From the IMG/VR virus record IMGVR_UViG_3300017786_003484, positions 124,001 through 188,000 of that record: a stretch of 64,000 nucleotides of DNA. The stretch is one strand, 5' to 3'. The notes under the pieces were generated by a model. It saw only the letters and a program-made list of their open reading frames with translations. It made no database searches and was not told the DNA's origin. Both the position numbers and the translations under genes were made by a program. Shown here in pieces: positions 2,864 through 48,020 of this stretch. Position 1 is the first letter of the stretch; every line of letters begins with the position of its first letter.

Positions 2864-2939
<76 letters not shown>

Positions 2940-30316: not shown

Positions 30317-30712
30317 ATGAGACCTATATGTTGTAACCATGGATGCGATAAACTAGTATGTTGTAGTATTGGAAAAATCAGCGATCCAAATCCAAGATGG
30401 AGACCGGTCTGCGGACATTGTCAACAGGCAAGTTACGGTAAACGTCCTTATAGAGATGGTGTTACTCCCTTTGTTACTGGAATATGTAGTAACAAGGATG
30501 GTCATCTTGGATTTGTATGCTGGACGAACTTTAAGAAAATGCCTAAAGATTTTAAAGGTAGAACTCAAATAGATCATGTCGACGGCGATCATAGTAATAA
30601 TGTTTTAGAAAATTTAGACGAATTATGCACTTCTTGCCATCAATATAAAGGTCAAAGAAATGGTGATCACAATGGTTGGAGAAACGGAAATCGACGAATG
30701 CTAGTGGAATAG
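30317..30712 (+). CDS. Cys-rich HNH endonuclease-like protein
   Basis: IDHVDGDHSNN..ENL..LCTSCH. Confidence 0.75.
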   Translation: MRPICCNHGCDKLVCCSIGKISDPNPRWRPVCGHCQQASYGKRPYRDGVTPFVTGICSNKDGHLGFVCWTNFKKMPKDFKGRTQIDHVDGDHSNNVLENLDELCTSCHQYKGQRNGDHNGWRNGNRRMLVE

Positions 30713-30714
30713 AT

Positions 30715-32573: not shown

Positions 32574-33884
32574 ATGTTTAATATAATTTCAAAACTAGAA
32601 GCTACTGCAAGCAAATTAGAAAAAGAAGCGATTGTTAGAGAACAAGCAGTTGCTAATAATACAGTATTCTTTGAAGGCTGTAGATTAGCATATGATGCTC
32701 TGGTAGTATTTGGTGTTAAGCAGGTCCCTGAAAAGAAGGAGCCAGGAGGAGAAGGTCTTGCATGGGACGATTTTATGGACCTTTGCAAAAGACTAATGAC
32801 TAGAGAAGTTACTGGACATGCGGCCGCTGATGCAATCCTTGTTGCTATGGTACAATCAACACAAGAAGAATGGAACGGTTGGTATCGTAGAATCCTCATC
32901 AAAGATATGAGAGCTGGCTTTCAAATTGGTACAATTAATCGTGTAGTTAAGAAAGACTTTCCTGATTATACAATCCCAGTATTTGAATGTCAGTTAGCTC
33001 ATGATAGTGCAAAGCATGAATCTAAAGTATCTGGTAAGAAACTAGTTGAAGTTAAGCTCGATGGTGTTAGAGTTATTACTATTGTATATCCAAACGGTGA
33101 TGTTACACAATACAGTCGTAATGGTAAAGAGCTTGTAAACTTCCCTCACATTAAAGAACAGTTTGCCGCAACTACATGTCATGAAGTGCCAATGGTGTTT
33201 GATGGTGAAGTTATGTCTGCAAACTTTCAAGACCTCATGCAAGTTATTCATAAGAAGAATGGTTCAACTGCCGCTAAAGATGCAGTTCTACATTTGTTTG
33301 ATATACTTACATTAGAAGATTTTCTTAATGGTATTAGCAATGTAACACAAATAGACAGAACGGCAGAATTAAAACGTTGGTTTGGTGTAGTAAGCTCTAC
33401 AGGTAAAGTAAATAACATTGCAATACTAGATCAAGAATTAATTGATTTAGATACTGATGAAGGGCAAAAAGCATATAGCGATATTAATGCAAAAGCAATC
33501 GCAGGTGGTTACGAAGGTATTATGATTAAAGATCTTGATGCACCATATGAGTGCAAAAGATCTGCTTCATGGTTAAAGTTAAAGCCTTTTATAGAGGTTT
33601 CGTTGGAGGTAATTGATGTCGAAGAAGGTACAGGTAAAAACAAAGGACGTTTGGGGGCTCTTGTTTGCGAAGGAAACGATGATGGGACGGATATTACCGT
33701 CAACGTTGGCTCGGGTCTTAGCGATAGTATGCGAGATAGTATTTGGGCTAACCGCGATAGTACTATTGGCCGTATTTGCGAAGTTCGTGCTGATGCTATA
33801 ACACAAAATAAAGACGGAACATATAGTTTACGTTTTCCAAGATTTAAAACATTTAGAGGCTTTGAAGCCGGAGAAAAAATATAA
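32574..33884 (+). CDS. ATP-dependent DNA ligase
   Basis: EVKLDGVR, FDGE, GYEGIMIK, WLKLKP, SLRFPRF. Confidence 0.95.
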   Translation: MFNIISKLEATASKLEKEAIVREQAVANNTVFFEGCRLAYDALVVFGVKQVPEKKEPGGEGLAWDDFMDLCKRLMTREVTGHAAADAILVAMVQSTQEEWNGWYRRILIKDMRAGFQIGTINRVVKKDFPDYTIPVFECQLAHDSAKHESKVSGKKLVEVKLDGVRVITIVYPNGDVTQYSRNGKELVNFPHIKEQFAATTCHEVPMVFDGEVMSANFQDLMQVIHKKNGSTAAKDAVLHLFDILTLEDFLNGISNVTQIDRTAELKRWFGVVSSTGKVNNIAILDQELIDLDTDEGQKAYSDINAKAIAGGYEGIMIKDLDAPYECKRSASWLKLKPFIEVSLEVIDVEEGTGKNKGRLGALVCEGNDDGTDITVNVGSGLSDSMRDSIWANRDSTIGRICEVRADAITQNKDGTYSLRFPRFKTFRGFEAGEKI

Positions 33885-34312
33885 TGAGAATTGCAATAGG
33901 AAATGATCACGGTGGATTAGAACTCGCAGATGCTTGCCGTGATTGGTTACAAGATAACGGCTATAGTGTTATTGATGTTGGAACCAATAACTCAGATAGT
34001 GTAGATTATCCTGTTTATGCAAAAAAGGTTGTTGAAGAAATAATTAGAGGACGAGTTGAATATGGCATACTAATATGCGGAACGGGCATAGGTATAAGCA
34101 TAGCGGCTAATAAATGGCCAGAGATACGGTGTGGTTTGTGCCATGATACAACTACTGCAAGGCTAACAAGGCTTCACAATGACGCTAATATCGTTGCTAT
34201 GGGCGGTCGTATAGTAGGAACTGAAGTAGGATTAGATATAATTAAGACATTTCTTAATACCGAATTCGAAGGTGGTAGGCATCAAAATCGTATTAACATG
34301 ATTGAAAGATAA
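33884..34312 (+). CDS. rpiB: Ribose-5-phosphate isomerase B
   Basis: GNDHGG, VDYP, ICGTGIG, AANK, HNDAN, FEGGRH. Confidence 0.95.
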   Translation: MRIAIGNDHGGLELADACRDWLQDNGYSVIDVGTNNSDSVDYPVYAKKVVEEIIRGRVEYGILICGTGIGISIAANKWPEIRCGLCHDTTTARLTRLHNDANIVAMGGRIVGTEVGLDIIKTFLNTEFEGGRHQNRINMIER

Positions 34313-34374: not shown

Positions 34375-34761
34375 ATGAATGAAGGACTTTTCCAGTTCGA
34401 AATTATTGTATCGTTACTATTCTTGAAGCATTTTTTATTTGATTATGTATTACAAAGTAAGGCAATGTTGTTATCGAAGCACATCTACGGAAGATGGTCT
34501 GGAATATTACATGCGATTGCCCATGGCGCTGGCACGTTTTTTGTATTATCAATAACTTCTTTAACCTGTGCTCTTTTCTTTGCAGTATTAGATACTGTCG
34601 TACATTATCATATAGATTGGATAAGAGGACGATTCGGAAGTAAAGATGTGACATCCGATTGTTTTTGGGTTCATATAGGTTTAGATCAGTTAGCACACGG
34701 ATTCACTTATATAGCTATTACTTCGGCGGTTGTCCATAATGTAATAGGTTTCAACCTTTAG
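34375..34761 (+). CDS. DUF3307-like membrane protein, paralog of 16264
   Basis: KHFLFD..LQ, HYHIDW, GLDQLAH. Confidence 0.75.
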   Translation: MNEGLFQFEIIVSLLFLKHFLFDYVLQSKAMLLSKHIYGRWSGILHAIAHGAGTFFVLSITSLTCALFFAVLDTVVHYHIDWIRGRFGSKDVTSDCFWVHIGLDQLAHGFTYIAITSAVVHNVIGFNL

Positions 34762-34796: not shown

Positions 34797-35093
34797 ATGC
34801 AAGAAAATATAGAAGAAGCATTAAAACAAGTATACGATCCAGAGATAAGCATCAACGTTTTTGATCTGGGACTTATCTATGATATTGATATCTCAAAAAT
34901 TCCACATGTAAATATTTTAATGACATTAACAAGTGCATTCTGTCCTTATGCAGATCAGTTAATTGAAGATGTTGAGCAAGCAGTATCTTCAGTTGAAGGT
35001 GTTGACACTTGTAAGGTTGAAGTTACCTTTGACCCGCCATTTGGTCCAGATAAAATGACAGAAGAAGTTAGAATGGTATTAGGTATTTTTTAA
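34797..35093 (+). CDS. DUF59/SufT-like Fe-S cluster assembly factor
   Basis: LKQVYDPEI..NVFDLGLIY, MTLTSAFCP, FDPP. Confidence 0.9.
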   Translation: MQENIEEALKQVYDPEISINVFDLGLIYDIDISKIPHVNILMTLTSAFCPYADQLIEDVEQAVSSVEGVDTCKVEVTFDPPFGPDKMTEEVRMVLGIF

Positions 35094-36637
35094 TGAGGAA
35101 TTGGGAAAAAAGTTGGAAAGATAAACTTAAAGAAGTAAAAGATCCAGTACAAATTGATAGGATGTCTCCTGATGAAGTAGAACGTGCTAAGAAAGAATAC
35201 TTGCTTAAACGTGGAGACGAAAACACAATAGAAGCCGGCAAGTTTAAAAGTGTTTATCAGTCAGATGCTAAGGCTGTCTTTGGTAAATTAAATCAGATAT
35301 CTCCTAGTTTCTGTTTAGCAAAATGGTTTAATGTTTCTTTACATATTCCAACTGGTAGAACACATTCCTGTTACCATCCTCCTGCACATTACGTTCCTCC
35401 GGGCGAACTTATAAACAATCCTAGTGCATTACATAACACAGAACATAAAAAGAAGCAACGAGAGATGATGCTTAACGGAGAACGTCCTAAGGAATGTTTC
35501 TTTTGTTGGAATATTGAAGATTCAGGCAATGAACTAAGTGACAGGGCATATAGAAGTAAAGATGTTTATCGTCCTGGTGTGTTTGAAGAAGTAGGAGAGC
35601 TAGGATCAACTGGAGATGCAAAGCCTAGGTATGTAGAGGTTAACTTTAACCAAGCCTGCAATTTAAAATGCTCTTACTGTAGTCCACATCTAAGTACAGC
35701 CTGGCATAAAGAAATAGACGAGAAAGGTCCTCTTAAATTAGCAGATGGTAGGGTGCATAATTCTACTGACTGGATGAAAAAAGATAACATGTGGCCTAAC
35801 AATAGTCCTGATAACATTTATCTAAAAGCATTTTGGGATTGGTTTCCAGATATATATCCTACATTACAAACTTTCCGAATGACAGGCGGAGAACCTTTGA
35901 TGGATAAAAATACTTTTAAAGTATTTGACTATGTCTTAGAAAGAAACGATAATCCGAAGTTACATTTAAGTATTACTAGTAATTGTTGTCCACCAGGTAA
36001 ACAATGGGAAAAGTTTTTAGTAAGTCTCAATCAATTAGAAGAAGCAAACGCCATTGATCACTTTATGCTATACTGTAGCCTCGATAGTTGGGGTAAACAA
36101 GCAGAGTACATAAGAACTGGTATGGACTTTGATATGCTACACAACAACGTTACAGAGTACTTAAATCGCGGTGTAAAGCATAGTCTAAACTTTATTGCAA
36201 CATTCTGTGCTATGAGCATACCTGGTTTTCAAACTTATTTAGAAAACATACTTGCATTAAGGAAAAAGTATAATACCAATAGACAACTTATTTGGTTTGA
36301 CACTCCTATGCTAATGGATCCAAATTGGTTGAGTTTAAAACTGCTTGACAAAGAGCAGTTAAATAGCTTGTTAACATGTATTGAATATATGGAAGATAAT
36401 AAAGAAGTAGTAGGCGAGCAATTTAAAGGATTTAAAGATTTTGAGATTGCCAAAGTAAAAAGATTATACGACTGGGCAATAGTACCAGATGACAATGTTG
36501 ATCAACTTCGTGCAAATTTCTATTCGTACATTGAACAACACGATACAAGGAGAGGGACAAATTTCTTAGAAACTTTTCCAGAGTTTGAAAAACTTTATAT
36601 TGAATCTAAGAAACAGTTTGATAGGTTAAAAACTTGA
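35093..36637 (+). CDS. Radical SAM protein with N-terminal twitch-like domain
   Basis: SFCLAKW..SCYHP..C..CW; CNLKCSYC; GGEP. Confidence 0.88.
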   Translation: MRNWEKSWKDKLKEVKDPVQIDRMSPDEVERAKKEYLLKRGDENTIEAGKFKSVYQSDAKAVFGKLNQISPSFCLAKWFNVSLHIPTGRTHSCYHPPAHYVPPGELINNPSALHNTEHKKKQREMMLNGERPKECFFCWNIEDSGNELSDRAYRSKDVYRPGVFEEVGELGSTGDAKPRYVEVNFNQACNLKCSYCSPHLSTAWHKEIDEKGPLKLADGRVHNSTDWMKKDNMWPNNSPDNIYLKAFWDWFPDIYPTLQTFRMTGGEPLMDKNTFKVFDYVLERNDNPKLHLSITSNCCPPGKQWEKFLVSLNQLEEANAIDHFMLYCSLDSWGKQAEYIRTGMDFDMLHNNVTEYLNRGVKHSLNFIATFCAMSIPGFQTYLENILALRKKYNTNRQLIWFDTPMLMDPNWLSLKLLDKEQLNSLLTCIEYMEDNKEVVGEQFKGFKDFEIAKVKRLYDWAIVPDDNVDQLRANFYSYIEQHDTRRGTNFLETFPEFEKLYIESKKQFDRLKT

Positions 36638-38112
36638 ATATAAGATTAAAATCAGACAAAGGCGGAGAACGGGTTTATAGAACCGACTTAGAAATTAAAG
36701 AACTTCTTGGTACAGTTAGTCCGTCATTCTGTATGGCTAAATGGTACAATGCTACAGTATGGCTTGGTTCAGGTCAAACTACTAGCTGTCATCACCCTTT
36801 ACCTCATCAGGCTGACTTAGAAGAAATTAAAAAGAATCCAAAAGCATTACACAATACCCAGCAAAAGAAAAAAGAACGTGCTATGATGCTGAAAGGCCAA
36901 AGGCCTGCTGGATGCGAATATTGCTGGAAAGTAGAGGACATTGGTAGAAATAATATTAGTGATAGAGTTTACAAAAGTGCAATCTATAATATGCCGTTGT
37001 TAGACGGGGCCGCAAAATTAGATCCTATGGAATCTGATTTTAATCTTCGTACTATGGAAATCAGTTTTGATAGGACTTGCCAGTTCGCATGTAGTTACTG
37101 CAACCCTGCATTCTCTACAACTTGGGTAAAAGACATTAGAAAAAACGGCCCTTATAAAGGTCTTAAAACAGACGGAGCGGGCCATTACGACCACGAAGCA
37201 GGTGATGCCGGAAAGTACGATAACAAAGATGATAACCCGTATGAAGAAGCATTTTTTAAATGGTGGGAAAGTGATTTACACAAGACATTAAAAGAATTAA
37301 GAGTTACAGGCGGAGAGCCATTAATGTCTAGAGGTACATGGAGATTGTTAGATTGGTTTGCAGAAGCATATCAGGACAAAGAAAAATATCCAGATTTTAA
37401 TAGACAGATGAGGCTTGCAATTAATAGCAATCTTTGTCCTAAGGACGACTTAATCGATAAGCTCGTTGAAAAAGCAATACACATTCCTGACTTAGACATT
37501 TATACATCTAACGAATCAACTAAAGAACATGCAGAATATATTCGAGACGGTTTAGATTGGGATCAATGGCTTAAAAACATTGAGAAGTTATGGACAGCAG
37601 GTCGTTTAACAAGATTCCATATGATGTGTACAGTTAATGCCTTATGCTTAGAAAGTCTACCAGAATTCTTAGAAATTTGTGTAGATATGAAAGAAAAATA
37701 TAATAGAGATTTTCCTACCTTTACGTTAAACATTTTAAGATTTCCTTCTTTTCAATCAGCAGTAGTTTTACCAGATGAGATCAGACAGAAGCATAAAGTT
37801 CGTTTAGAAAACTTTCTTAACAAGTATAAAGAGCATCCTTTGCAACATGAAATGGAGTGTAATCAAGTACAACGTTTGATAGACTACCTCGATGTAGTAA
37901 AAACTCCACATGCTGATTCATATGAACAAGCACAATTACAAGTAGACTTTAAACGTTACTATACACAATACGATAAAAGACGTGGCAAAGACTTTTGCTC
38001 TACTTTCCCTGGCTTAGCAGATTGGTATAGAACTATACCAGACCAGTATAGAAAGCCGTTGGATCCTAGTATAGAAGCCAAAAGGAAAAAGTCAATATTT
38101 GGTAGTATTTAA
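36634..38112 (+). CDS. Radical SAM protein with twitch-like domain (paralog)
   Basis: SFCMAKW..SCHHP..CEYCW; CQFACSYC; GGEP. Confidence 0.88.
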   Translation: MNIRLKSDKGGERVYRTDLEIKELLGTVSPSFCMAKWYNATVWLGSGQTTSCHHPLPHQADLEEIKKNPKALHNTQQKKKERAMMLKGQRPAGCEYCWKVEDIGRNNISDRVYKSAIYNMPLLDGAAKLDPMESDFNLRTMEISFDRTCQFACSYCNPAFSTTWVKDIRKNGPYKGLKTDGAGHYDHEAGDAGKYDNKDDNPYEEAFFKWWESDLHKTLKELRVTGGEPLMSRGTWRLLDWFAEAYQDKEKYPDFNRQMRLAINSNLCPKDDLIDKLVEKAIHIPDLDIYTSNESTKEHAEYIRDGLDWDQWLKNIEKLWTAGRLTRFHMMCTVNALCLESLPEFLEICVDMKEKYNRDFPTFTLNILRFPSFQSAVVLPDEIRQKHKVRLENFLNKYKEHPLQHEMECNQVQRLIDYLDVVKTPHADSYEQAQLQVDFKRYYTQYDKRRGKDFCSTFPGLADWYRTIPDQYRKPLDPSIEAKRKKSIFGSI

Positions 38113-39443
38113 TGACTATAGATGAAATTAAAAATGATGATGTTGTACTTGCAATAGAATCTTGGAACGGAAAGTATAACGTCTTCTCTCCTAATGCCTG
38201 GCCAAAGAATTGGATCGTAGATGGCGTTAGAACAATTCCTCCGCTTGAAGGTAGAGATTGGTTTGATCTCAAGCCAGGTGATGCTACATTATCAGACGAA
38301 GAAGTAATGTTAAACAGAAAGCCAGGAAAGCAGATGTTTCTTTCACATTACAAAGATGAGTTTAAACATAGGTTACTCGAAGATGTTCCAGTAAATAGGA
38401 AATACTTATATCCAATTGAAATCAATAGACCGGGTGCATTAGTTAGCAATGAACATCTTAATGATTTTATGCATGTCAGTCCAACAGTAAAGCAAGATGT
38501 AAGGAATGGTCGTGCTAAGATTATATTGCTTATGCCATATGAAGGAGATTATCCTGTAGAAGTATTTGACAAGTTACATACTTGGTGTACCAACTGTGAG
38601 TTTAATAAAGATGATGTATACTTTGTCAATGCAAATATAAAAAGTGAGAAGTTAAGTAAAGATTTAAACTTTTCTGTAAAAGTACTTCCAACTATATTTA
38701 CATCTATGTTTCCTATGTACAGAGCAAACTATGATGAGAATATCTATACTAACGAATGTACATATGAACCTACTTCTAATTTAACAAATTTGTATGTTTG
38801 TTACAATAGACGTCCTAGGTACCATAGGCTCATAATGCTATGTTCTTTGTTGTCTAATAATATATGGCACAGGGGATTAATTAGTCATAGGCCGGACAAC
38901 TTTAAACAGGACCTTAGTCAAATTAATTGGGAGTTTCAGAGCTATGTAAAGATGCTAGAAGCAATAGGACCAAAAGAACTTGATATGGATTTACTTGATA
39001 ATAATCCTGCTATACAATATAATATAGATCATTACAGCCAAACGTTTTTGAGTCTTATTCCTGAAACTGGATTTTCATCTCATAGTGTTTTCTTATCTGA
39101 GAAAATTTGGAAGTCAATTCGAGTTGGACATCCTTTTGTAGTAGTTGGAAATCCAGGAACATTAACAGAGTTACACAACTTAGGATTTAAAACATTTGGT
39201 GATTGGTGGGACGAAAGTTATGACGAAGAAATTAATTTAGAGAAACGTATTAAGAAAATATCGAAGGTGCTAGTAAAACTTTCACAACTAAGTATACTTG
39301 AGTTGAAGAACTTACGACGTGATCTAAGAGATACAGTTGAGTTTAATCAAAATTTAATTAATTCCTTTGGGTTAGAAAATCCTATGGACAAAATAGCAAC
39401 AGTGGTAAAAGAAATAAATGATTCCTTTCTTCCAAGAGATTAA
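38112..39443 (+). CDS. Putative glycosyltransferase-like protein, paralog of 30715
   Basis: CYNRRPR.HR, IPET, FLSEKIWK, HPF, GFKTF..WWDESYD. Confidence 0.55.
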   Translation: MTIDEIKNDDVVLAIESWNGKYNVFSPNAWPKNWIVDGVRTIPPLEGRDWFDLKPGDATLSDEEVMLNRKPGKQMFLSHYKDEFKHRLLEDVPVNRKYLYPIEINRPGALVSNEHLNDFMHVSPTVKQDVRNGRAKIILLMPYEGDYPVEVFDKLHTWCTNCEFNKDDVYFVNANIKSEKLSKDLNFSVKVLPTIFTSMFPMYRANYDENIYTNECTYEPTSNLTNLYVCYNRRPRYHRLIMLCSLLSNNIWHRGLISHRPDNFKQDLSQINWEFQSYVKMLEAIGPKELDMDLLDNNPAIQYNIDHYSQTFLSLIPETGFSSHSVFLSEKIWKSIRVGHPFVVVGNPGTLTELHNLGFKTFGDWWDESYDEEINLEKRIKKISKVLVKLSQLSILELKNLRRDLRDTVEFNQNLINSFGLENPMDKIATVVKEINDSFLPRD

Positions 39444-40767
39444 AGATAAATTAGATGCAGTTAGTCCGTCATTTTGTATTGCCAAATGGAAAACTCTCAC
39501 CTTACATTTAGGCTTAGGAGAAAACCATTCGTGCTATCACCCACCAATGCATAAGATTGATCCTTGGGCAATTAAAAGAGATCCAAGTGCATTACATAAT
39601 ACAGAACATAAAAAGCAAATTCGTAAATTAATGCTAGAAGGTGTTAGGCCAACAGAATGTGATTATTGCTGGCACGTTGAAAACTTACCTGGTAACCAAG
39701 CAAGTGATAGAGTCCGTCATAGTAGTAGCCCTGATATGTTTGGAGAATTAGACAAAATTAAAAGTTCTGCATTTGATGTTAATATTAATCCAAGTTGGTT
39801 AGAGTTAAGTTTTAGTAACCATTGTAATCTAAGATGTAGTTACTGTGGCCCTGGTGCAAGTAGTCGTTGGAGAGATGAGATAAAACGTTTTGGCGGGTAT
39901 CCTGTAAGAAATGATGCACAAGGTAACGGCCCTGATGCATTACACAAGCAGTATAAAGAAGAAGAAAATCCATATGTAGAAGCATTTTGGAAGTGGTGGC
40001 CTGATCTGTATCCAGATTTACGCACCTTGCGTATTACCGGTGGCGAGCCAATGATGACTACAGGATACTTTAAAATATTTGATTATGCAATGGAACATCC
40101 TAATAAGGAATTGTCGTTTAATGTTAATACTAATTTAAGTGTACCAACAAAAACTATTGAAAAGTTTATTAACGTTGCACAAAAATTAGAAGCAAGTGGC
40201 AATGTAAAAAGTATTGGATTGTTTACCAGTATTGACACAGGTAGCAAGCCAGCTGAATATATTAGAGACGGTTTATCAAACGAAAGATATTATAATCATT
40301 TAAAAATGATTATGGATGCAGTACCTAATATTGAAGTTAGTTTTATGATTACATTTGGTCCACTAAGTTTGTTTAACTTTACAGAACTCTTAGATTTTAT
40401 TGTAACATTGAGAGAAAGATATCCTAACAATAAAATTGGAATAGGAATTGCTGTTTTAAACTATCCTAGTCACTTTGATTTAAAAATATTACCTGAACGT
40501 TTTAGGCCTTGGTTTGATAAAATTACAGCTCATTTTGAAAACCCAATGAACAAATGGCCGCAATATGAAAGAGATTACTGGAAAACATTATTAACACATT
40601 GGGAAACAACCAAAGACGATAACGGACACCTTGATGACAGAATTGACTTTTATAGATTTTTTAAAGAACATGACTTTAGACGCAAGACAAGTATACTACT
40701 AAGTGTACCTGAGATTGAAGAATTTTATCTAGAGTGTGAGGAATTAAGTTATGCAAGAAACTACTAG
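39418..40767 (+). CDS. Radical SAM protein with twitch-like domain (paralog)
   Basis: SFCIAKW..SCYHP..CDYCW; CNLRCSYC; GGEP. Confidence 0.88.
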   Translation: MIPFFQEIKDKLDAVSPSFCIAKWKTLTLHLGLGENHSCYHPPMHKIDPWAIKRDPSALHNTEHKKQIRKLMLEGVRPTECDYCWHVENLPGNQASDRVRHSSSPDMFGELDKIKSSAFDVNINPSWLELSFSNHCNLRCSYCGPGASSRWRDEIKRFGGYPVRNDAQGNGPDALHKQYKEEENPYVEAFWKWWPDLYPDLRTLRITGGEPMMTTGYFKIFDYAMEHPNKELSFNVNTNLSVPTKTIEKFINVAQKLEASGNVKSIGLFTSIDTGSKPAEYIRDGLSNERYYNHLKMIMDAVPNIEVSFMITFGPLSLFNFTELLDFIVTLRERYPNNKIGIGIAVLNYPSHFDLKILPERFRPWFDKITAHFENPMNKWPQYERDYWKTLLTHWETTKDDNGHLDDRIDFYRFFKEHDFRRKTSILLSVPEIEEFYLECEELSYARNY

Positions 40768-41932
40768 ATGTGTTAATGCAGAACACGGAATTTCTTTAGA
40801 AAATCACGGAGCGGCAAAACCTTGTTGTATGGTAAACAAAAACTATAACTGGTTATCTGATAATACTAAACACTCTATCACTCAATCGAGTTTACAAGAT
40901 TGTTATACTAACGAAGTGTCCACTCAACTTAGAGAAAATTTAAAAAATGGTATAAGAGATCCTAATTGCTCAAGGTGTTGGGACGAAGAAGATGCTGGTA
41001 GACGTAGTAAACGTATGAGAGATAATGAACGTTATGAAGATGTAGAACTAACAGGACTTGCAATACTTGAATTGAATCTTGGCAATACATGTAATCTTGC
41101 ATGTAAAACTTGTGGTCCTACAGTTAGTACTGGATGGATTAAAGAAGCCTTTGTACATTCTAAAAGAACTGACCAAAAAGAATTCAATAAGCAATTTAAA
41201 AAGTTTCAAAGAGCATATGATGATGACGCAGACTTTTGGAAGCAACTTGAAGATAATTTGCCTAATGTAAGAGAGTTATTATTTTACGGAGGTGAACCTT
41301 TTATGATTAAGAGAATGTGGAAAGTACTCCAGCTCTGTGTAGATAAGGGATATGCTAAAGATATAGAAATACATTTTAATACTAACGGAACACATTGGCC
41401 TAAAGAAACAAGTGTATTTGAACACTTTAAACATGTTCATTTGTCATTCAGCATCGACGGTATAGGCGAACGTTTTAATAGTATGAGGTTTAACGCAGAC
41501 TGGATTCTAGTTTGTGACAACATGAGAAAAGCATCTGCAATAAGAGATAAGGTAAACATTAACTTGTCATGGTGTATTACTGTTAGTAGTCTTAATATCT
41601 ATTATATTGATGAGGTTATAAAAGAGATAGAAGAAAATTGGGAAGATTTAGGATTTCATTATTACCTAAATTTAGTACATCAGCCTGCACATTGGAACGT
41701 ACAAAATATTCCAAATAATATTAAAAATAAAATTAAAGAGCATTTATCAAAGTTTAATAAAGGCATGTCCACAGATTCTTATCAAGCAATTATTAATTTT
41801 ATGATGCAAGGAAATAGTGATCCAAAGCAATGGGAGTTATTTAAACATAACATTGACAAGCAGAATAAGACTCGTAACGAAGATTGGATTGCTATTAATA
41901 AAGATTACGGGAAGTTGATTTTAGATGGATAA
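40751..41932 (+). CDS. Radical SAM protein with twitch-like domain
   Basis: KPCC..CSRCW; CNLACKTC; GGEPF. Confidence 0.88.
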   Translation: MQETTRCVNAEHGISLENHGAAKPCCMVNKNYNWLSDNTKHSITQSSLQDCYTNEVSTQLRENLKNGIRDPNCSRCWDEEDAGRRSKRMRDNERYEDVELTGLAILELNLGNTCNLACKTCGPTVSTGWIKEAFVHSKRTDQKEFNKQFKKFQRAYDDDADFWKQLEDNLPNVRELLFYGGEPFMIKRMWKVLQLCVDKGYAKDIEIHFNTNGTHWPKETSVFEHFKHVHLSFSIDGIGERFNSMRFNADWILVCDNMRKASAIRDKVNINLSWCITVSSLNIYYIDEVIKEIEENWEDLGFHYYLNLVHQPAHWNVQNIPNNIKNKIKEHLSKFNKGMSTDSYQAIINFMMQGNSDPKQWELFKHNIDKQNKTRNEDWIAINKDYGKLILDG

Positions 41933-43250
41933 TTTTTGGAGTTATCAAAATATTAGACAAGTTCATATTGAACTAACAAATGCATGTAATGCAGGTTGTC
42001 CGATGTGTGTCCGTTTTTATCAAAGTAGTCCCTTAACTAGACCTGATATTGAAATAGGACAAATAACATTGGAGGACTTTAAAAAATTCTTTCCTCCTAA
42101 ATTTATAAAACAGTTGACAACGATACTTTTCTGTGGAGTATCAGGTGATGCAGGTACTGCTAGAGATACATTAGAGATAATGGAATATATTGCGTCTTGT
42201 GATAGTAGAGTATCAATAAGAATGAATACTAACGGAGGTATGCGTAAACCAGACTGGTGGACAAAACTAGGTAAAGTGTTTAAAAAACAAGAAAAATATA
42301 ATTGGGGGTTAACATTTAGTGTTGACGGTCTCAGAGATACTAATCATTTATATAGAAGGAATGTTGTTTGGAAAAATTTAATTAACAACATGGAGGCGTT
42401 TACTGATACAGGTGCTGATACTACATGGGATTATTTAATATTTGAACACAACGAACATCAAATTGAAACCGCAAGAGATATAGCCGAATCTATGGGAATA
42501 GCCTTTAGGCCAAAAAGAGCATTAGGAGTTGATGATGGAGAATACCTAAAACCAATTGCTGTAAGAAATAAATTAGGAACTATAGATTATTTTATTAGAG
42601 CTCCTAAAGATCCTGAAAACAGAAATTTAAAAAATCCTGTAGGTGTAAGAGATGATATGTATAATATCCGTCCTGATTTTGACACAGAAGAATATTGGAA
42701 TGTTAGAAATAAAAAGAAACCATTAGTAGGAAATCATGGACTTACTGAAGAGGCAGGATTAGCACATAACCAAGTTACGTTTGAAAAAAATATGAGCGAC
42801 GTTTATAAAACACTAGACTTAGTAGATACTACAAAACAAGATAAAACAGAAATAGATTGTAAAAGTAGTATGGATAATGGCGGCACAGAAATATTTGTTG
42901 ATCAAGCAGGTATTGTTCATCCGTGCTGTTACATAGGTACACATTTAAATAGTAAATTTTTTGCTCCAGTCACAACACAATTACATGATACAATGAATAA
43001 GCACGATGGATGGAAAAAAGTAAACCTTTATAATTATAGCTTAGAGCAAATTTTAAATTCAGGCGCCTTAAATACAATGTGGGCAAAGGCTTGGAATAAA
43101 CCAACAGTTCAACAAGGCAAGACAATGTTTTGTGCTGATACTTGTCCTAAAAATAAATTAAGTGCAGTTGATAAAATTTTCAGGCACAAAGACGACCCTA
43201 GGCCCGACGAAGGATCCTATCAAAGAAAAAAAGCACATATAAAGGAGTAA
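41925..43250 (+). CDS. Radical SAM/SPASM-type protein
   Basis: CNAGCPMC, TNGG, SVDG, C-terminal PCC..C...C. Confidence 0.85.
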   Translation: MDNFWSYQNIRQVHIELTNACNAGCPMCVRFYQSSPLTRPDIEIGQITLEDFKKFFPPKFIKQLTTILFCGVSGDAGTARDTLEIMEYIASCDSRVSIRMNTNGGMRKPDWWTKLGKVFKKQEKYNWGLTFSVDGLRDTNHLYRRNVVWKNLINNMEAFTDTGADTTWDYLIFEHNEHQIETARDIAESMGIAFRPKRALGVDDGEYLKPIAVRNKLGTIDYFIRAPKDPENRNLKNPVGVRDDMYNIRPDFDTEEYWNVRNKKKPLVGNHGLTEEAGLAHNQVTFEKNMSDVYKTLDLVDTTKQDKTEIDCKSSMDNGGTEIFVDQAGIVHPCCYIGTHLNSKFFAPVTTQLHDTMNKHDGWKKVNLYNYSLEQILNSGALNTMWAKAWNKPTVQQGKTMFCADTCPKNKLSAVDKIFRHKDDPRPDEGSYQRKKAHIKE

Positions 43251-43252
43251 AC

Positions 43253-43414
43253 ATGAATACCCGACCAACACTATATACATGTGAATGCGGACGCATTTTT
43301 GGAGCAGAGCTGAGTGGAGATATAGGAGTTGATCCTGATTTTCTTCCAAAGTTTAAATGTGATGATTGCTCAAAAAAACAAAAAGAGGAGAGTGTTGATG
43401 TTCATATGGCATGA
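43253..43414 (+). CDS. 53-aa Zn-ribbon-like microprotein (not in the ORF track)
   Basis: AAGGAG SD; MNTRPTLYTCECG...KCDDCSKK. Confidence 0.6.
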   Translation: MNTRPTLYTCECGRIFGAELSGDIGVDPDFLPKFKCDDCSKKQKEESVDVHMA

Positions 43415-44054
43415 TTTTGTTATAGTAGGAGATAGTTTTTGTATGTCTAGAAAAGCAAAAACAGACTGGCCGCAGTTAGTTTTATCAGGTCTTACTGGTG
43501 AGCCATTTGAGGATAATAAACCAGTTAGAGGTAGAGGTGTTGCAGGAGGGTCCTGGTGGAAAGCAAGAAGAATACTAAACCAAGAAGCATTTAGTAATGG
43601 TAGACCCAGAGTAATTATATTTTGTCATTCAGACTCCGCTAGAATTAACCATGATGGAAATGAACCATATAATGCCGCTACTATGGATTCTTATCCAGAA
43701 GTCAAGAGTTATTATGATCATATGTTTTCTCCTGATTTTCATAAATGGGCAAAGATTGCTTATTTTAGAGAATTAAATGCAAGATGGGACACTTCCTTAT
43801 GTTTACACTTTCATTGTTTTGACGAATTTCTAGATGACGAAGTACAACTTAACGGATTAGTTTATAAAAAGTCACTAACTAGTTTAGTTGGAGAAGATAG
43901 GTTAAAGGTAAAAGAATCTGGAATATCAAACCATATGACAAAGGACCAACAGAAAACATTTGCTGACAACATTATTAAAATGATAACTGAAAATAAAGTT
44001 GACAATACTATAGATATTATTAATGGAAATAGTAACGATGATCCGATGGACTAG
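43398..44054 (+). CDS. SGNH/GDSL-like protein
   Basis: VGDSF, RGVAGGS, SNH; GAGGAG SD. Confidence 0.65.
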   Translation: MFIWHDFVIVGDSFCMSRKAKTDWPQLVLSGLTGEPFEDNKPVRGRGVAGGSWWKARRILNQEAFSNGRPRVIIFCHSDSARINHDGNEPYNAATMDSYPEVKSYYDHMFSPDFHKWAKIAYFRELNARWDTSLCLHFHCFDEFLDDEVQLNGLVYKKSLTSLVGEDRLKVKESGISNHMTKDQQKTFADNIIKMITENKVDNTIDIINGNSNDDPMD

Positions 44055-44166
44055 AAATAGATTATTTGTTCAGTATTTTATCAACTTATGGACTAAGTTT
44101 AAAAGAAAACGCCGAATGGCACAAAATATCAAAGAAGCAAAAAAACGAGACCCGTTTATATACTAA
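44038..44166 (+). CDS. Small basic protein ending in KRDPFIY, coupled to the carbamoyltransferase (not in the ORF track)
   Basis: MIRWTRNRLF...KEAKKRDPFIY; TAATG overlap; alternative start at 44023. Confidence 0.65.
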   Translation: MIRWTRNRLFVQYFINLWTKFKRKRRMAQNIKEAKKRDPFIY

Positions 44167-45647
44167 TGAAAATACTTGGCATCACAACTCAAAACCATGA
44201 CGCTAGTTTAGCACTAGTAAGTGGAAATAGAATACTCTGGGCAGGCCACTCGGAAAGATATTCTCGCAACAAAAATGATTCTATTTTAAATCAAGACATA
44301 GTTGATGAGATGCTTTCATATGGAAAGCCTCAAAAAATTGTATTCTTTGAAGATGTAATTGAAAAGAGTTGGAGAAAATGGAGAGCAAGCGAAACACCTT
44401 ATAACCATCACAATTTAGTTAAAGAAGAACTTAGAAAGTATGGCTTGCTAGATACAGGTTGGAATTATGTAAAACATCATAGAGCTCATGCCGCCGGAGG
44501 ATTTTATACATCTGGCTTTAGGAATGCTCTAGTAATTAGCATTGATGCAATAGGAGAAAGAGATACGACTACATTCTGGAAAGCAAAGGACGGTGTATTA
44601 GATAAGAAGCCTTTCCTGCGTCAAAGTTATCCTGATAGTATTGGATTATTTTATAGTGCATTAACAGATTTTGTTGGGCTAAAAGCAAACGAAGAAGAAT
44701 ATATTTTTATGGGGATGGCGGCATATGGAAAAGTTATTCCTGAACTTAAGAAACTTATGCTACAGGACTTCTTTAAACAACTCAATCCTCCTTACTTTAA
44801 ACTAAGACATAACTTACATAGAGGTTGTCGTTGGTGGGAAGTTCCTAAAGAAATTAGTTATGGACATTATGATATAGCGGCCTGTGCCCAATCTATTGTA
44901 GAGGATTATCTTATTGATTCTGTAAATTATTTAAAAAAATATTGGACAGTATCATCCAATTTAGTGTTCATGGGAGGCGTTGCATTAAATTGTGTTGCGA
45001 ATACAAAACTATCTAAATTATTTAAAAATACATACATCATGCCTAACCCAGGGGATTCAGGAAGTGCTATTGGAGCAGTAGCGGCTTACCTAGATAAACC
45101 ATTATCGTGGAAAGGTCCTTACCTAGGAACTAATATTGAAGGAGAACTTAATATTAAAAAAGCAATAGCCTCATTGATGCAAGGAAATGTTATAGGAATT
45201 GCCAAAGGTCGTGCTGAATTTGGTCCTAGAGCATTAGGCAATAGAAGTTTACTATGCGATCCACGAGGTGCCAATGCTAAGAACAAAATGAATGAAATAA
45301 AGAAAAGGCAAAAATTTAGACCCTTTGCACCTGCAGTATTAGCGGAACATGCAAACACATATTTTGATATGCCAATGAAAGAAACGCCTTACATGCAGTA
45401 TGTAACTCAGTGCAAACAGCCTAACGAGTTTCCTGCTATATGTCATGTGGACAATAGTAGCAGAGTTCAAACTGTAAATAATACAACAGATAATAAAATG
45501 TTTAGAGCCTTACTAGAAGAATGGTATAAAGTATCAGGTTGCCCAATGTTAATGAATACTAGTTTAAACATCAAAGGAGAGCCTTTAGTAAACTCATGGG
45601 AAGATGCTAAACGTTTTGAAGAATTACATAATATTGAGATTTTTTAA
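44166..45647 (+). CDS. Carbamoyltransferase (NodU/CmcH/TobZ family)
   Basis: HDAS, ERYSR.K, HH.AH, GGVALNC.AN, EFGPRALGNRS, FRPFAP, NTSLN..GEP. Confidence 0.95.
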   Translation: MKILGITTQNHDASLALVSGNRILWAGHSERYSRNKNDSILNQDIVDEMLSYGKPQKIVFFEDVIEKSWRKWRASETPYNHHNLVKEELRKYGLLDTGWNYVKHHRAHAAGGFYTSGFRNALVISIDAIGERDTTTFWKAKDGVLDKKPFLRQSYPDSIGLFYSALTDFVGLKANEEEYIFMGMAAYGKVIPELKKLMLQDFFKQLNPPYFKLRHNLHRGCRWWEVPKEISYGHYDIAACAQSIVEDYLIDSVNYLKKYWTVSSNLVFMGGVALNCVANTKLSKLFKNTYIMPNPGDSGSAIGAVAAYLDKPLSWKGPYLGTNIEGELNIKKAIASLMQGNVIGIAKGRAEFGPRALGNRSLLCDPRGANAKNKMNEIKKRQKFRPFAPAVLAEHANTYFDMPMKETPYMQYVTQCKQPNEFPAICHVDNSSRVQTVNNTTDNKMFRALLEEWYKVSGCPMLMNTSLNIKGEPLVNSWEDAKRFEELHNIEIF

Positions 45648-47952: not shown

Positions 47953-48020
47953 GTACTAATAAAACCCCTAAAAACAAGCGATCTAACGCCGTATGATATT
48001 GTGCCATAGGTACATTTTCT

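What the first reader, a model, noticed from the sequence alone, without database searches (positions are those of the whole stretch)
34797..43250. Five-gene radical-SAM array headed by its own Fe-S assembly factor
Seen: a SufT/DUF59 gene is TAATG-coupled to an overlapping run of five radical-SAM genes plus a glycosyltransferase-like gene. Three are close paralogs with an N-terminal Cys domain (SPSFCxAKW, SCxHP, CxxCW) ahead of CxxxCxxC. The run continues into SGNH and carbamoyltransferase genes. Inference: an iron-expensive pathway, probably building or decorating a glycan or virion surface, with dedicated cluster delivery. Similar arrays occur in large aquatic phages, but I know of no defined product.
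Basis: partly seen in the sequence, partly recalled or inferred. Interest (0 to 1): 0.62.

Follow-up and report, generated by a model that had tools for sequence, protein, structure and literature searches.

The report
Phage radical-SAM sugar operon with SufT
A widespread marine jumbo phage carries one tightly packed operon: an iron-sulfur maturation factor (SufT), five radical-SAM enzymes, and a glycosyltransferase-fold protein. It most likely builds or decorates an unknown sugar structure, and a close relative places a complete SufBCD iron-sulfur assembly machine at the head of the same operon.

Summary
The run SufT(DUF59)-rSAM-rSAM-GT-rSAM-rSAM-rSAM is real. It is on one strand and joined by overlaps of 1 to 26 nt.

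- **rSAM families:** four genes, not three, belong to NCBIfam NF033640 (N-terminal-twitch rSAM, no known function). The fifth is a different rSAM with a Cys-rich C-terminus. The three "close" paralogs are only 32-36% identical and sit in separate old subfamilies.
- **Middle gene:** it has a GT-B glycosyltransferase fold.
- **Extent:** the operon continues through an overlooked 53-aa four-Cys ORF, two DUF6071/GDSL-like genes and a carbamoyltransferase.
- **Genome:** the record is a gp23-type jumbo myovirus, found near-identical in seawater metagenomes of at least 13 studies.
- **Glycan link:** related viral loci embed N-twitch rSAMs among GT7, NDP-sugar dehydratase/epimerase, methyltransferase and sulfotransferase genes. 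This supports a carbohydrate substrate.
- **Fe-S link:** a relative with 85-90% identical rSAMs has sufB-sufC-sufD-sufT fused by overlaps to the same array. Viral SufT genes lie near rSAM genes more often than a control gene does.

The product, acceptor and chemistry remain unknown. MoaA and other housekeeping families are excluded. I rate it a new variant of a known kind, with moderately high interest.

The parts
33884..34312 (+). RpiB/LacAB-type sugar-phosphate isomerase. It lies upstream in conserved synteny and may supply a sugar-phosphate precursor.
   Evidence: PF02502 at 1.6e-57. The same position is kept in relatives L129 and L297.
34375..34761 (+). DUF3307 protein of unknown role, syntenic with the array.
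   Evidence: PF11750 at 9e-08. It is conserved upstream of SufT or SufBCD in L129 and L297.
34797..35093 (+). SufT-type DUF59 Fe-S maturation factor (98 aa). Its stop codon overlaps the start of rS1 (TAATG).
   Evidence: PF01883 at 3e-20. TIGR02945 scores 117.6 bits, below its cut-off of 143.4. The ortholog in L297 follows sufBCD. dN/dS is 0.06-0.18.
35093..36637 (+). rS1, an N-terminal-twitch radical SAM enzyme (514 aa).
   Evidence: NF033640 at 312.7 bits against a cut-off of 170. Motifs SPSFCLAKW, SCYHP, CFFCW and CNLKCSYC are present. It is 89% identical to its L297 ortholog, with dN/dS 0.06.
36634..38112 (+). rS2, an N-terminal-twitch radical SAM enzyme (492 aa, TTG start overlapping the rS1 stop by 4 nt).
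   Evidence: NF033640 at 313.2 bits. It sits in a supported clade with viral orthologs of up to 58% identity.
38112..39443 (+). X3, a GT-B-fold glycosyltransferase-like protein (443 aa) with no sequence family.
   Evidence: The AF2 model has pLDDT 87.8. All 50 listed VIA entries are glycosyltransferases, essentially all GT-B, with Z of 9.9-11.8 and FUT9 on top. Homologues are fused to NDP-sugar epimerase/dehydratase domains. It co-occurs with N-twitch rSAMs in 32 of 47 non-redundant viral loci.
39418..40767 (+). rS4, an N-terminal-twitch radical SAM enzyme (449 aa).
   Evidence: NF033640 at 300.8 bits. The AF2 model has pLDDT 92.5. Cys 20, 39, 81, 84 and 136, 140, 143 are invariant in 27 sequences.
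40751..41932 (+). rS5, a divergent N-terminal-twitch radical SAM enzyme (393 aa). The second N-domain Cys is missing.
   Evidence: NF033640 at 280 bits. It is 23-27% identical to rS1, rS2 and rS4. It falls in a separate supported clade.
41925..43250 (+). rS6, a different radical SAM enzyme (441 aa). The core is at the N-terminus and the C-terminus is Cys-rich and SPASM/twitch-like.
   Evidence: PF04055 matches residues 15-182. NF033640 scores only 48.9 bits. phrog_21308 at 5.5e-15. rS6-like genes are the commonest neighbours of viral SufT, in 26 of 80 loci.
43253..43414 (+). Overlooked 53-aa ORF with CxC...CxxC. It could be a small metal-binding protein or, less likely, a substrate peptide.
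   Evidence: AAGGAG lies 6 nt upstream of its ATG. It is conserved in L129, and a 45% identical homologue is present in L297.
43398..44054 (+). S7, a DUF6071/GDSL-like protein (218 aa from the ATG at 43398).
   Evidence: It carries a GDSF block but has no Pfam hit. Atlas gives a feature score of 0.95-0.96 and TM 0.65-0.73 to DUF6071 and Lipase_GDSL clusters.
44166..45647 (+). NodU/NolO-family carbamoyltransferase (493 aa).
   Evidence: PF16861 at 5.9e-53, PF02543 at 2.9e-38. phrog_1601 at 2e-104.
45647..46483 (+). S9, a DUF6071/SGNH-like protein (278 aa). Its start overlaps the carbamoyltransferase stop.
   Evidence: It carries a GDSF block. Atlas gives 0.96 to a DUF6071 cluster and 0.95 to a 'putative SGNH hydrolase-type esterase' cluster. 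No Pfam hit.

Best explanation
This is a translationally coupled operon of an uncultured marine gp23-type jumbo phage, and it most likely encodes a carbohydrate-tailoring pathway.

**Proposed roles (inferred).**
- Four N-terminal-twitch radical SAM enzymes each hold the SAM-cleaving [4Fe-4S] cluster on CxxxCxxC. They probably hold an auxiliary cluster on four conserved Cys of the N-terminal domain. Together with one C-terminal Cys-rich radical SAM enzyme, they perform successive radical modifications of a sugar, nucleotide-sugar or glycan.
- The GT-B protein X3 transfers the sugar.
- The carbamoyltransferase and the two DUF6071/GDSL-like proteins decorate its hydroxyl groups.
- The DUF59/SufT protein at the head is an Fe-S maturation accessory factor. 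It raises the supply of clusters for about ten [4Fe-4S] sites per enzyme set, working with the host Suf system. In relatives it works with a phage-encoded SufBCD scaffold.

**Shown here:** gene order, overlaps, family memberships, folds, purifying selection, conserved synteny, and the glycan and Suf gene neighbourhoods.

**Inferred only:** carbohydrate as the substrate, the order of steps, cluster stoichiometry, the SufT-client relation, and the target (virion or host surface).
For: **Operon structure.**
- Overlaps are -1, -4, -1, -26, -17 and -8 nt.
- No terminator-like site lies on the + strand between 32403 and 48000.
- RNA-library contigs identical to the window bridge X3/rS4 (39329-39602) and rS4/rS5 (40648-40798).

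**Family and fold.**
- NF033640 is above cut-off for four genes.
- Seven Cys are invariant.
- The rS4 model has pLDDT 92.5 and an rSAM core. Its top structural neighbour is BlsE, a sugar-nucleoside rSAM, at Z 13.3. DesII scores 11.1, but these are tied with peptide maturases.
- X3 has a GT-B fold with Z of 11-12, and its homologues are fused to NDP-sugar epimerase/dehydratase domains.

**Glycan context.** Among 149 sampled neighbours from 47 non-redundant viral loci:

| Neighbour family | Count |
|---|---|
| GT7 | 27 |
| ConA-like lectin | 21 |
| NDP-sugar epimerase/dehydratase | 11 |
| Methyltransferase | 9 |
| Polysacc_synt_2 | 8 |
| RmlD | 7 |
| DUF6071 | 5 |
| RmlC | 2 |
| Sulfotransferase | 1 |

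Among the 25 commonest families the only protease is a single Clp protease. No ABC transporter or RiPP-recognition family is listed.

**Fe-S link.**
- L297 and L298 carry sufB-sufC-sufD-sufT-rS1-rS2-X3-rS4, all overlapping.
- SufT-centred viral loci hold an rSAM in 34 of 80 cases against 3 of 80 for the control (p = 2.7e-9). After de-replication this is 9 of 28 against 3 of 56 (p = 0.002).
- In L161, a 322-kb contig, SufT sits inside an N-twitch array.
- SufT is an accessory factor needed when Fe-S demand is high (PMC4982691).

**Selection.** dN/dS is 0.06 for rS1, rS2 and rS4 at saturated dS. The four paralogs occupy separate old clades.
Against: - No substrate, product or cluster content was measured.
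- The structural neighbours of the rSAM core are tied between sugar-acting enzymes (BlsE, DesII, anSME-like) and peptide-acting ones (SkfB, SuiB, CteB).
- In Bdellovibrionota the same family forms arrays of up to 16 to about 20 copies per genome. The neighbours there are mixed: an S9 peptidase-ABC fusion, an asparagine synthase homologue, Asp/Arg hydroxylases, flagellins, GT2 and DegT.
- No nucleotidyltransferase, flippase or initiating transferase was seen in this window.
- The SufT-rS1 complex prediction gave no verdict.
- Most viral sufBCDT operons (49 of 54) have no rSAM within 10 kb. Viral Suf genes are therefore not exclusively tied to these arrays.
- RNA-library contigs cannot exclude DNA carry-over.
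Confidence: 0.5

Rival explanations
1. The radical SAM enzymes are peptide or protein maturases in the style of RiPP systems. They would install thioether, C-C or epimerised residues in a small peptide (for example the 53-aa four-Cys ORF) or in a virion protein. The GT, carbamoyltransferase and esterases would tailor that product further.
For: - Foldseek's best matches are the peptide maturases SkfB, CteB and SuiB. By VIA, SkfB scores Z 12.8 and SuiB 12.1.
- A conserved small Cys-containing ORF follows rS6 directly.
- Arrays in Bdellovibrionales lie near an ABC ATPase, an S9 peptidase-ABC2 fusion, an asparagine synthase homologue and Asp/Arg hydroxylases.
Against: - No PqqD/RRE or other peptide-recognition domain is detected, only PF04055.
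- Viral neighbours are overwhelmingly nucleotide-sugar and glycosyltransferase genes. Among the 25 commonest neighbour families the only protease is a single Clp protease, and no ABC transporter family is listed.
- The small ORF was not found in the other viral loci I held.
- Its Cys pattern changes in L297.
- The structural ranking is a tie and covers only the common core.
Confidence: 0.2
2. The pathway does make a glycan, but its target is the infected cell's envelope (LPS, capsule or S-layer glycan) rather than the virion. The purpose would be to block superinfection or to alter the surface during a long infection.
For: - The same glycan-context evidence as the main explanation applies.
- The block lies among metabolic and auxiliary genes (peroxiredoxin, ligase, RpiB, nuclease, hydrolases), not structural genes.
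- X3 and S9 are the fastest-diverging genes between near-identical phages. They are 87% and 91% identical, against 98-100% for their neighbours. This is what one expects of surface-specificity determinants.
Against: - No lipid-carrier initiating transferase, flippase, polymerase or ligase was seen near the array.
- The same fast divergence fits virion epitopes equally well.
- The timing of expression is unknown.
Confidence: 0.2
3. The operon hypermodifies phage DNA. A GT-B enzyme like T4 beta-glucosyltransferase would attach a sugar to a modified base. The radical SAM enzymes and the carbamoyltransferase would elaborate it to evade restriction.
For: - T4 BGT and the phage HY126 glycosyltransferase are among X3's top structural matches, at Z 11.3-11.5.
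- A DNA ligase and a nuclease flank the block.
Against: - These Z scores are tied with dozens of unrelated GT-B enzymes.
- Neighbours in related loci are lectin-fused GT7, sulfotransferases, and NDP-sugar dehydratases and epimerases of 6-deoxyhexose type. These are typical of complex glycans, not of DNA modification.
- No base-hydroxymethylase or DNA-modification hallmark was noted near the array, although I did not search for one specifically.
Confidence: 0.07
4. The array is housekeeping or cofactor biosynthesis (MoaA, PqqE or NirJ-like) picked up from a host. SufT would be an unrelated passenger gene.
For: Weak partial hits to MoaA, NrdG, QueE and NirJ models, as every rSAM core gives.
Against: - All such hits score 12-42 bits against cut-offs of 131-650.
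- The family is phage-dominated, with Atlas clusters 97-100% viral.
- Orthologs keep their gene order in divergent phages.
- The SufT linkage recurs.
Confidence: 0.02

Closest known systems
NCBIfam NF033640 'twitch domain-containing radical SAM protein' (N_Twi_rSAM)
   Same: rS1, rS2, rS4 and rS5 match end to end above the curated cut-off. They carry the N-terminal Cys domain ahead of CxxxCxxC. One Atlas cluster of structural twins carries Pfam SPASM hits in 48% of its members.
   Different: The family has no assigned function, and I found no paper on it. Here four old subfamilies are arrayed with a GT-B gene and headed by SufT. rS5 lacks the second N-domain Cys.
Twitch/SPASM radical SAM enzymes acting on sugars or sugar-nucleosides (BlsE, BtrN, DesII, AprD4) and on peptides (SkfB, SuiB, CteB, anSME)
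   Same: They share the partial TIM-barrel rSAM core: BlsE Z 13.3, SkfB 12.8, anSME 12.2, SuiB 12.1, DesII 11.1. An auxiliary Cys-ligated cluster domain is probably present too.
   Different: The auxiliary domain is N-terminal instead of C-terminal, and it was not aligned to any solved structure (only residues from about 100 to 400 matched). Sequence identity is 13-17%. No peptide-recognition domain is present.
SufT / DUF59 Fe-S maturation accessory factor (S. aureus SufT, M. tuberculosis Rv1466)
   Same: It is a single-domain DUF59 protein of about 100 aa with the DPE and TSxxCP motifs. In relative L297 it sits directly after sufBCD, as in bacterial suf operons. Its established role is greatest under high Fe-S demand (PMC4982691).
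   Different: It is phage-encoded and translationally coupled to client-like rSAM genes rather than to sufBCD in this genome. It scores below the TIGR02945 equivalog cut-off.
Phage-encoded Fe-S assembly auxiliary genes (for example SufB in freshwater amoC-phages, bioRxiv 10.64898/2026.06.18.733297; an Fe-S assembly protein beside a viral ferredoxin in Lake Baikal viruses, PMC7678222)
   Same: A virus carries Fe-S biogenesis genes, and these are proposed to serve a virus-encoded Fe-S protein.
   Different: Here the assembly genes are physically fused by gene overlaps to an array of five Fe-S enzymes. The clade shows both the full form (sufBCDT) and the reduced form (sufT only).
GT-B glycosyltransferases (GT10 fucosyltransferase FUT9, GT4 enzymes, T4 BGT)
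   Same: X3 has the two-Rossmann-domain GT-B fold over residues 10-441, with Z of 10-11.8.
   Different: No Pfam or PDB sequence match was found. X3 belongs to a phage-rich uncharacterised family, some members of which are fused to NDP-sugar epimerase/dehydratase or UDP-glucose dehydrogenase domains.

Membership tests
NCBIfam NF033640 N_Twi_rSAM | Full-length HMM match at or above the curated cut-off of 170 bits | tested here: met
   rS1 312.7, rS2 313.2, rS4 300.8 and rS5 280.0 bits. rS6 scores 48.9 bits and is not a member.
NCBIfam NF033640 N_Twi_rSAM | CxxxCxxC radical-SAM motif preceded by an N-terminal Cys-rich (twitch-like) domain | tested here: met
   C20, C39, C81, C84 and C136, C140, C143 are invariant in 27 sequences. 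rS5 lacks the second Cys.
NCBIfam NF033640 N_Twi_rSAM | The N-terminal domain binds an auxiliary Fe-S cluster | not testable with these tools
   This needs Fe/S analysis, EPR or Mossbauer spectroscopy of purified protein.
SufT (TIGR02945 SUF_assoc equivalog) | HMM score at or above the curated cut-off of 143.4 bits | tested here: not met
   It scores 117.6 bits at E = 2.6e-34, full length but below the cut-off. The Pfam DUF59 domain PF01883 is met, at 72.7 against 23.5 bits.
SufT (TIGR02945 SUF_assoc equivalog) | Gene neighbourhood with sufBCD | tested here: inconclusive
   No SUFBD_core was found in the 244-kb record, which is 74% complete. The syntenic ortholog in L297 and L298 directly follows sufB-sufC-sufD. 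In 22 of 54 viral SufB loci SufT lies downstream.
MoaA (TIGR02666) | HMM score at or above 284 bits | tested here: not met
   The best score is 30.7 bits, and the matches are only local.
C-terminal SPASM/twitch radical SAM (for rS6) | Pfam SPASM or a related model, or the CX9-15GX4C...CX2CX5CX3C motif | tested here: inconclusive
   No SPASM hit at E <= 0.01. The sequence shows C-x16-G-x4-C followed later by CxxxC. That is only a partial motif.
GT-B glycosyltransferase (for X3) | Two-Rossmann GT-B fold | tested here: met
   pLDDT is 87.8. All 50 listed VIA entries are glycosyltransferases, essentially all of GT-B fold, with Z of 9.9-11.8.
GT-B glycosyltransferase (for X3) | Membership of a curated GT sequence family, or a demonstrated donor-binding site | tested here: not met
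   No Pfam, NCBIfam or PHROG hit. A profile search against PDB sequences found nothing relevant.
NodU/NolO-type carbamoyltransferase | Carbam_trans_N and Carbam_trans_C domains | tested here: met
   132.6 and 179.3 bits. The NodU equivalog NF041651 is not met, at 136 bits against 1000.
SGNH/GDSL hydrolase (for S7 and S9) | HMM match or the four SGNH blocks | tested here: inconclusive
   No Pfam hit even at E <= 1. A GDSF block I is present. Atlas feature and structure similarity to DUF6071 and Lipase_GDSL clusters is a lead only.
RiPP radical-SAM maturase system | A precursor peptide plus a peptide-recognition (RRE/PqqD) domain | tested here: not met
   No PqqD/RRE family was detected in any of the five rSAMs. 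A 53-aa Cys-containing ORF exists but is not conserved outside close relatives.

The most novel reading that the evidence does not exclude
A cosmopolitan clade of marine jumbo phages runs its own iron-sulfur assembly line. The full form is sufBCDT and the reduced form is sufT alone. It is joined by gene overlaps to an array of phage-specific N-terminal-twitch radical SAM enzymes. These enzymes would carry out carbohydrate radical chemistry that has not been described, making an unusual sugar for the virion or the infected-cell surface. NF033640 has thousands of members and its Atlas clusters are almost wholly viral. It would then be the largest uncharacterised phage-borne radical SAM family, and the first case of a virus coupling cofactor biogenesis to its own client enzymes in one operon.
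Probability: 0.35. Interest if true: 0.8.

Novelty: new variant of a known kind. Interest (0 to 1): 0.62.

Why it matters
Radical SAM enzymes are rare and costly cargo for a virus. This 244-kb record has eight of them, five in one operon. Together they need roughly ten [4Fe-4S] clusters per enzyme set, in iron-poor seawater.

The comparative data give a concrete, testable case of a virus that brings both the Fe-S enzymes and part or all of the machine that loads them.

The N-twitch family (NF033640) is very large. More than 6,800 clusters at 90% identity hit one query, 526 IMG/VR contigs carry close relatives, and the Atlas clusters are 97-100% viral. It has no known reaction. Its steady company of glycosyltransferases and nucleotide-sugar enzymes points to new carbohydrate radical chemistry and to phage-made glycans, whose roles in adsorption, immune or defence evasion and particle stability are barely explored.

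The phage itself is common. Seawater metagenomes of at least 13 studies hold it nearly letter for letter.

Tried and rejected
- **Megablast of the array against 50,697 phage records:** no match.
- **tblastn against cultured phages:**
  - rS1 finds only Ralstonia jumbo phage RsoM2USA gp349, at 37% identity.
  - SufT finds only unannotated records labelled Listeria, Staphylococcus or Enterococcus phage and human faecal 'Bacteriophage sp.', mostly short. I suspect host DNA.
  - rS6 finds only weak core matches.
- **Structure searches for rS4** (Foldseek PDB, VIA wide): only the common rSAM core aligns, and sugar-acting and peptide-acting enzymes are tied. No substrate call is possible.
- **Profile search of X3 against PDB sequences:** nothing relevant.
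- **Complex prediction, SufT with rS1:** no verdict (score 0.00, controls not run). This counts neither for nor against binding.
- **Neighbour tally around Bdellovibrionota arrays:** heterogeneous, with no dominant theme.
- **A strict regex signature for rSAM ORFs:** it missed rS6 and the B12-type rSAM in the window, so I dropped it in favour of tblastn.
- **Peroxiredoxin-centred control loci:** they come from the same broad phage clade, so they are not a neutral sample. rSAMs were detected only by similarity to this window's own rSAMs. Both points are limits on the enrichment figure.
- **Literature searches** for the family, for jumbo-phage rSAM/GT clusters and for viral SufT: nothing specific.
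- **Promoter and terminator scans:** counts are at or below the shuffled expectation, so they give no positive evidence for transcript boundaries.
- **Own genome:** no MetK, 2Fe-2S ferredoxin or SufBD.
- **GT10 motif:** the resemblance of X3's '...FLSEKIWK' segment to the GT10 fucosyltransferase motif is from memory only and was not tested.

Full report
**1. What is there**

The window is bases 124001-188000 of a 244,432-bp IMG/VR virus record that CheckV estimates to be 74% complete. The record encodes a T4 gp23-type major capsid protein (PF07068, 6e-98) and a large terminase. It has no NCLDV capsid. The capsid protein is 63-66% identical to those of jumbo myoviruses such as Pseudomonas PA5oct, Sinorhizobium Phosso and Vibrio 2.275.O. 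The genome is therefore an uncultured jumbo phage, not a giant eukaryotic virus. Runs from seawater, marine and viral metagenomes in at least 13 studies hold 97-100% of the sampled 31-mers of the array. The phage is common in the sea.

On the + strand the genes run as follows.

| Gene | Coordinates | Note |
|---|---|---|
| SufT | 34797-35093 | |
| rS1 | 35093-36637 | |
| rS2 | 36634-38112 | TTG start |
| X3 | 38112-39443 | |
| rS4 | 39418-40767 | |
| rS5 | 40751-41932 | |
| rS6 | 41925-43250 | |
| S7 | from 43398 | |
| carbamoyltransferase | 44166-45647 | |
| S9 | 45647-46483 | |

The junctions from SufT to rS6 are -1 (TAATG), -4, -1, -26, -17 and -8 nt. The 53-aa ORF has AAGGAG 6 nt before its ATG. 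It overlaps the better-supported start of S7, an ATG at 43398 preceded by GAGGAG, which is the start used in relatives. The block is therefore almost continuous from 34797 to 46483.

**2. Family assignments**

- **SufT.** It is a full-length DUF59 domain (PF01883, 3e-20). It matches the SufT equivalog model end to end but below its cut-off, at 117.6 against 143.4 bits.
- **N-twitch rSAMs.** rS1, rS2, rS4 and rS5 all exceed the curated cut-off of NCBIfam NF033640, 'twitch domain-containing radical SAM protein', at 280-313 against 170 bits. The family has four members here, not three.
- **Divergence of the paralogs.** rS1, rS2 and rS4 are 32-36% identical to each other, and rS5 is 23-27% identical to them. 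In a 124-row tree the four occupy four separate places. rS1, rS2 and rS5 fall in supported clades with orthologs from other viral contigs of up to 58% identity (FastTree, local supports only). They are old subfamilies, not recent duplicates. This argues for distinct steps or substrates.
- **Conserved Cys.** In a 27-sequence alignment the four N-domain Cys (C20, C39, C81, C84 in rS4) and the three SAM-cluster Cys (C136, C140, C143) are invariant.
- **rS6.** It is a different enzyme. Its core is at the N-terminus and its C-terminus is Cys-rich with a partial SPASM-like motif.
- **Housekeeping families.** They are excluded. MoaA reaches at most 30.7 bits against a cut-off of 284.
- **X3.** It has no sequence family. 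A confident model (pLDDT 87.8) matches only glycosyltransferases. By VIA, all 50 listed entries are glycosyltransferases, essentially all of GT-B fold, with Z of 9.9-11.8 and FUT9 on top.
- **Carbamoyltransferase.** It is a clear NodU/NolO-family member.
- **S7 and S9.** They have a GDSF block and resemble viral DUF6071/GDSL clusters only by Atlas features and shape. 'SGNH' remains a lead.

**3. Is it functional and co-expressed?**

A near-identical phage (L129, 96.5% nt identity) keeps the whole order from RpiB to SNase, with dN/dS of 0.02-0.24. In that comparison X3 (87% aa) and S9 (91%) stand out against 98-100% for their neighbours.

A more distant relative (L297, about 80% nt identity over the array) gives dN/dS of 0.06 for rS1, rS2 and rS4 at saturated dS. 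These are the most constrained genes of the block.

No terminator-like site lies on the + strand between 32403 and 48000. However, the scan counts do not exceed the shuffled expectation.

Four marine RNA libraries from three studies hold contigs identical to parts of the array. They include pieces that bridge X3/rS4 (39329-39602) and rS4/rS5 (40648-40798). Contigs cannot prove transcription, and DNA carry-over is not excluded.

**4. What the relatives say about the substrate**

One word search with rS4 returned more than 6,800 clusters, almost all unnamed. A narrow pattern scan found 526 IMG/VR contigs. Atlas clusters with the same shape (TM 0.90-0.95) are 97-100% viral.

Among 47 non-redundant viral loci, 32 carry an X3-like gene on the same strand and 16 carry two to seven N-twitch copies. 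The order 'N-twitch, rS2-type, X3, rS5-type' recurs.

I scanned a random 149 of the 502 same-strand neighbours against Pfam.

| Neighbour family | Members |
|---|---|
| GT7 | 27 |
| ConA-like lectin domain | 21 |
| NDP-sugar epimerase/dehydratase | 11 |
| Methyltransferase | 9 |
| Polysacc_synt_2 | 8 |
| RmlD | 7 |
| DUF6071 | 5 |
| TPP enzymes | 3 |
| RmlC | 2 |
| UDP-glucose dehydrogenase | 1 |
| Sulfotransferase | 1 |

Among the 25 commonest families the only protease is a single Clp protease. No ABC transporter or peptide-recognition family is listed.

One locus read in detail shows two GT7 genes (one also carrying a lectin domain), the rSAM, two DUF6071 genes, a HAD-nucleotidyltransferase fusion, the X3-like gene and a sulfotransferase. 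X3 homologues occur fused to NDP-sugar epimerase/dehydratase domains and to a UDP-glucose/GDP-mannose dehydrogenase. In RsoM2USA, the only cultured carrier, an NDP-sugar dehydratase lies 7 kb upstream.

This is guilt by association, but it is consistent and points to carbohydrate chemistry.

Structure does not decide the question. Only the rSAM core aligns, and BlsE (Z 13.3), SkfB (12.8), anSME (12.2), SuiB (12.1), MoaA (11.9) and DesII (11.1) are effectively tied.

In cellular genomes the family is concentrated in Bdellovibrionota. There it is hugely expanded: 16 copies above the cut-off in a 1.9-Mb genome and about 20 in another. The neighbours there are mixed, which keeps a peptide or protein substrate alive as a rival.

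**5. What the relatives say about SufT**

Contigs L297 and L298 carry X3 at 73% identity, and rS1, rS2 and rS4 at 85-90%. Their order is RpiB, DUF3307, SufB, SufC, SufD, SufT, rS1, rS2, X3, rS4, and the junctions from SufB to rS4 are -4, -17, -4, -13, -4, -1 and -26 nt. In that phage a complete SufBCD scaffold plus SufT is therefore fused to the same array. It lacks rS5, rS6 and S7, so the array is modular.

The window's own record has no SufBD. It also has no MetK and no 2Fe-2S ferredoxin.

Among 80 viral loci centred on a SufT relative (45-56% identity, median length 8 kb), 34 hold an rSAM similar to one of this window's. The rSAM is often abutting and on the same strand. One 322-kb contig (L161) has rS1-SufT-rS2-rS5x3. 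Among 80 loci centred on the peroxiredoxin gene, with longer flanks, only 3 hold an rSAM. Fisher's test gives p = 2.7e-9. After clustering near-identical loci the counts are 9 of 28 against 3 of 56, p = 0.002. The control is imperfect, as explained under Tried and rejected.

Viral sufBCD operons are themselves a feature of this broad clade. There are 54 contigs, and 22 have SufT downstream, often followed by the peroxiredoxin. Only 5 of the 54 have an rSAM within 10 kb. Phage Suf genes therefore serve more than these arrays, or their clients lie elsewhere in those genomes.

SufT is established as an accessory factor whose role is greatest when Fe-S demand is high (PMC4982691). Phage-borne SufB has been reported once as an auxiliary gene (bioRxiv 10.64898/2026.06.18.733297). 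A viral Fe-S assembly protein has been proposed to serve a viral ferredoxin (PMC7678222). A complex prediction for SufT with rS1 returned no verdict.

**6. Most likely mechanism**

- **Shown:** the operon architecture, family and fold assignments, strong purifying selection, conserved synteny, a glycan-gene neighbourhood in many viral lineages, and a Suf-gene neighbourhood in relatives.
- **Inferred:**
  - The five rSAMs act in sequence on a sugar, nucleotide-sugar or nascent glycan.
  - X3 transfers it.
  - The carbamoyltransferase and the DUF6071/GDSL-like proteins add or remove O-substituents.
  - SufT improves cluster loading of these enzymes during infection.
  - The 53-aa four-Cys protein may be a small metal-binding or redox partner. 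This last point is speculative.

I put 0.5 on this overall reading. The rivals are a peptide or protein substrate at 0.2, a host-envelope rather than virion target at 0.2 as a sub-question, DNA hypermodification at 0.07, and housekeeping at 0.02.

**7. Novelty**

The sequence family is catalogued but functionless. Viral glycan clusters and sporadic viral Fe-S assembly genes are known. The new elements are:
- the physical fusion of an Fe-S assembly module (sufT, or sufBCDT in relatives) to an array of phage-specific N-twitch rSAMs with a dedicated GT-B partner;
- the evidence that this family lives mainly in phage glycan loci.

I rate it a new variant of a known kind, with interest 0.62.

Noticed in passing
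window 60021-61595 (+) and 61570-62532 (-); G000:C1:234111-234590: There are three more radical SAM genes. One has a weak B12-binding N-terminus (524 aa) and is 31% identical to a gene in viral locus L011. One is a 320-aa gene on the opposite strand with a C-terminal Cys motif. One lies outside the window. The 244-kb record has eight rSAM genes in all.
   Followed up: partly
window 38112-39443 and 45647-46483, compared with L129: Between two phages that are 96.5% identical in DNA, X3 (87% aa) and S9 (91% aa) are much more diverged than their neighbours (98-100%). dS is also raised in X3, at 0.36. This suggests allele replacement or recombination at specificity-determining genes.
   Followed up: partly
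L299-L352 (IMG/VR contigs, some 216-340 kb): Many large marine phage contigs carry a sufB-sufC-(sufD)-sufT-peroxiredoxin module. The peroxiredoxin is homologous to window 29738-30274. In the window that gene sits 4.5 kb upstream of SufT with no SufBCD between them, which looks like a reduced version of the module.
   Followed up: partly
G001 (1.9-Mb Bdellovibrionales chromosome) and G002: NF033640 is massively expanded in predatory bacteria. G001 has 16 copies above the cut-off, in arrays of up to eight. G002 has about 20. Some arrays end in a different N-terminal-core rSAM, as the phage array ends in rS6.
   Followed up: partly
window 30317-30712 and 30676-31956: An HNH endonuclease gene is followed by a 403-426-aa ORF with no family, between the peroxiredoxin and the DNA ligase. 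It may be a homing-endonuclease insertion.
   Followed up: no
window 49832-50590: A weak Asp/Arg beta-hydroxylase-like (cupin) ORF, at E = 4.7e-4. The same Pfam family appears three times among the neighbours of Bdellovibrionota N-twitch arrays.
   Followed up: no
window 2864-2939, 15507-15583, 19746-19819: Three tRNA genes: Thr-TGT, Arg-TCT and Gly-TCC.
   Followed up: no
window 48000-48051: A terminator-like hairpin at 48000-48014 is followed at once by a perfect 12/12 sigma-70-like promoter with an extended -10 TG, at 48023-48051. This may be the downstream boundary of the transcription unit that holds the array.
   Followed up: no
L097 (Pelagibacterales MAG contig, 23 kb) and L098 (Beijerinckia sp. 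L45 contig, 28 kb): These are N-twitch rSAM loci, with an X3-like gene in L097, on short contigs binned as bacteria. They look like phage DNA in bacterial bins, so they should not be read as host assignments.
   Followed up: no
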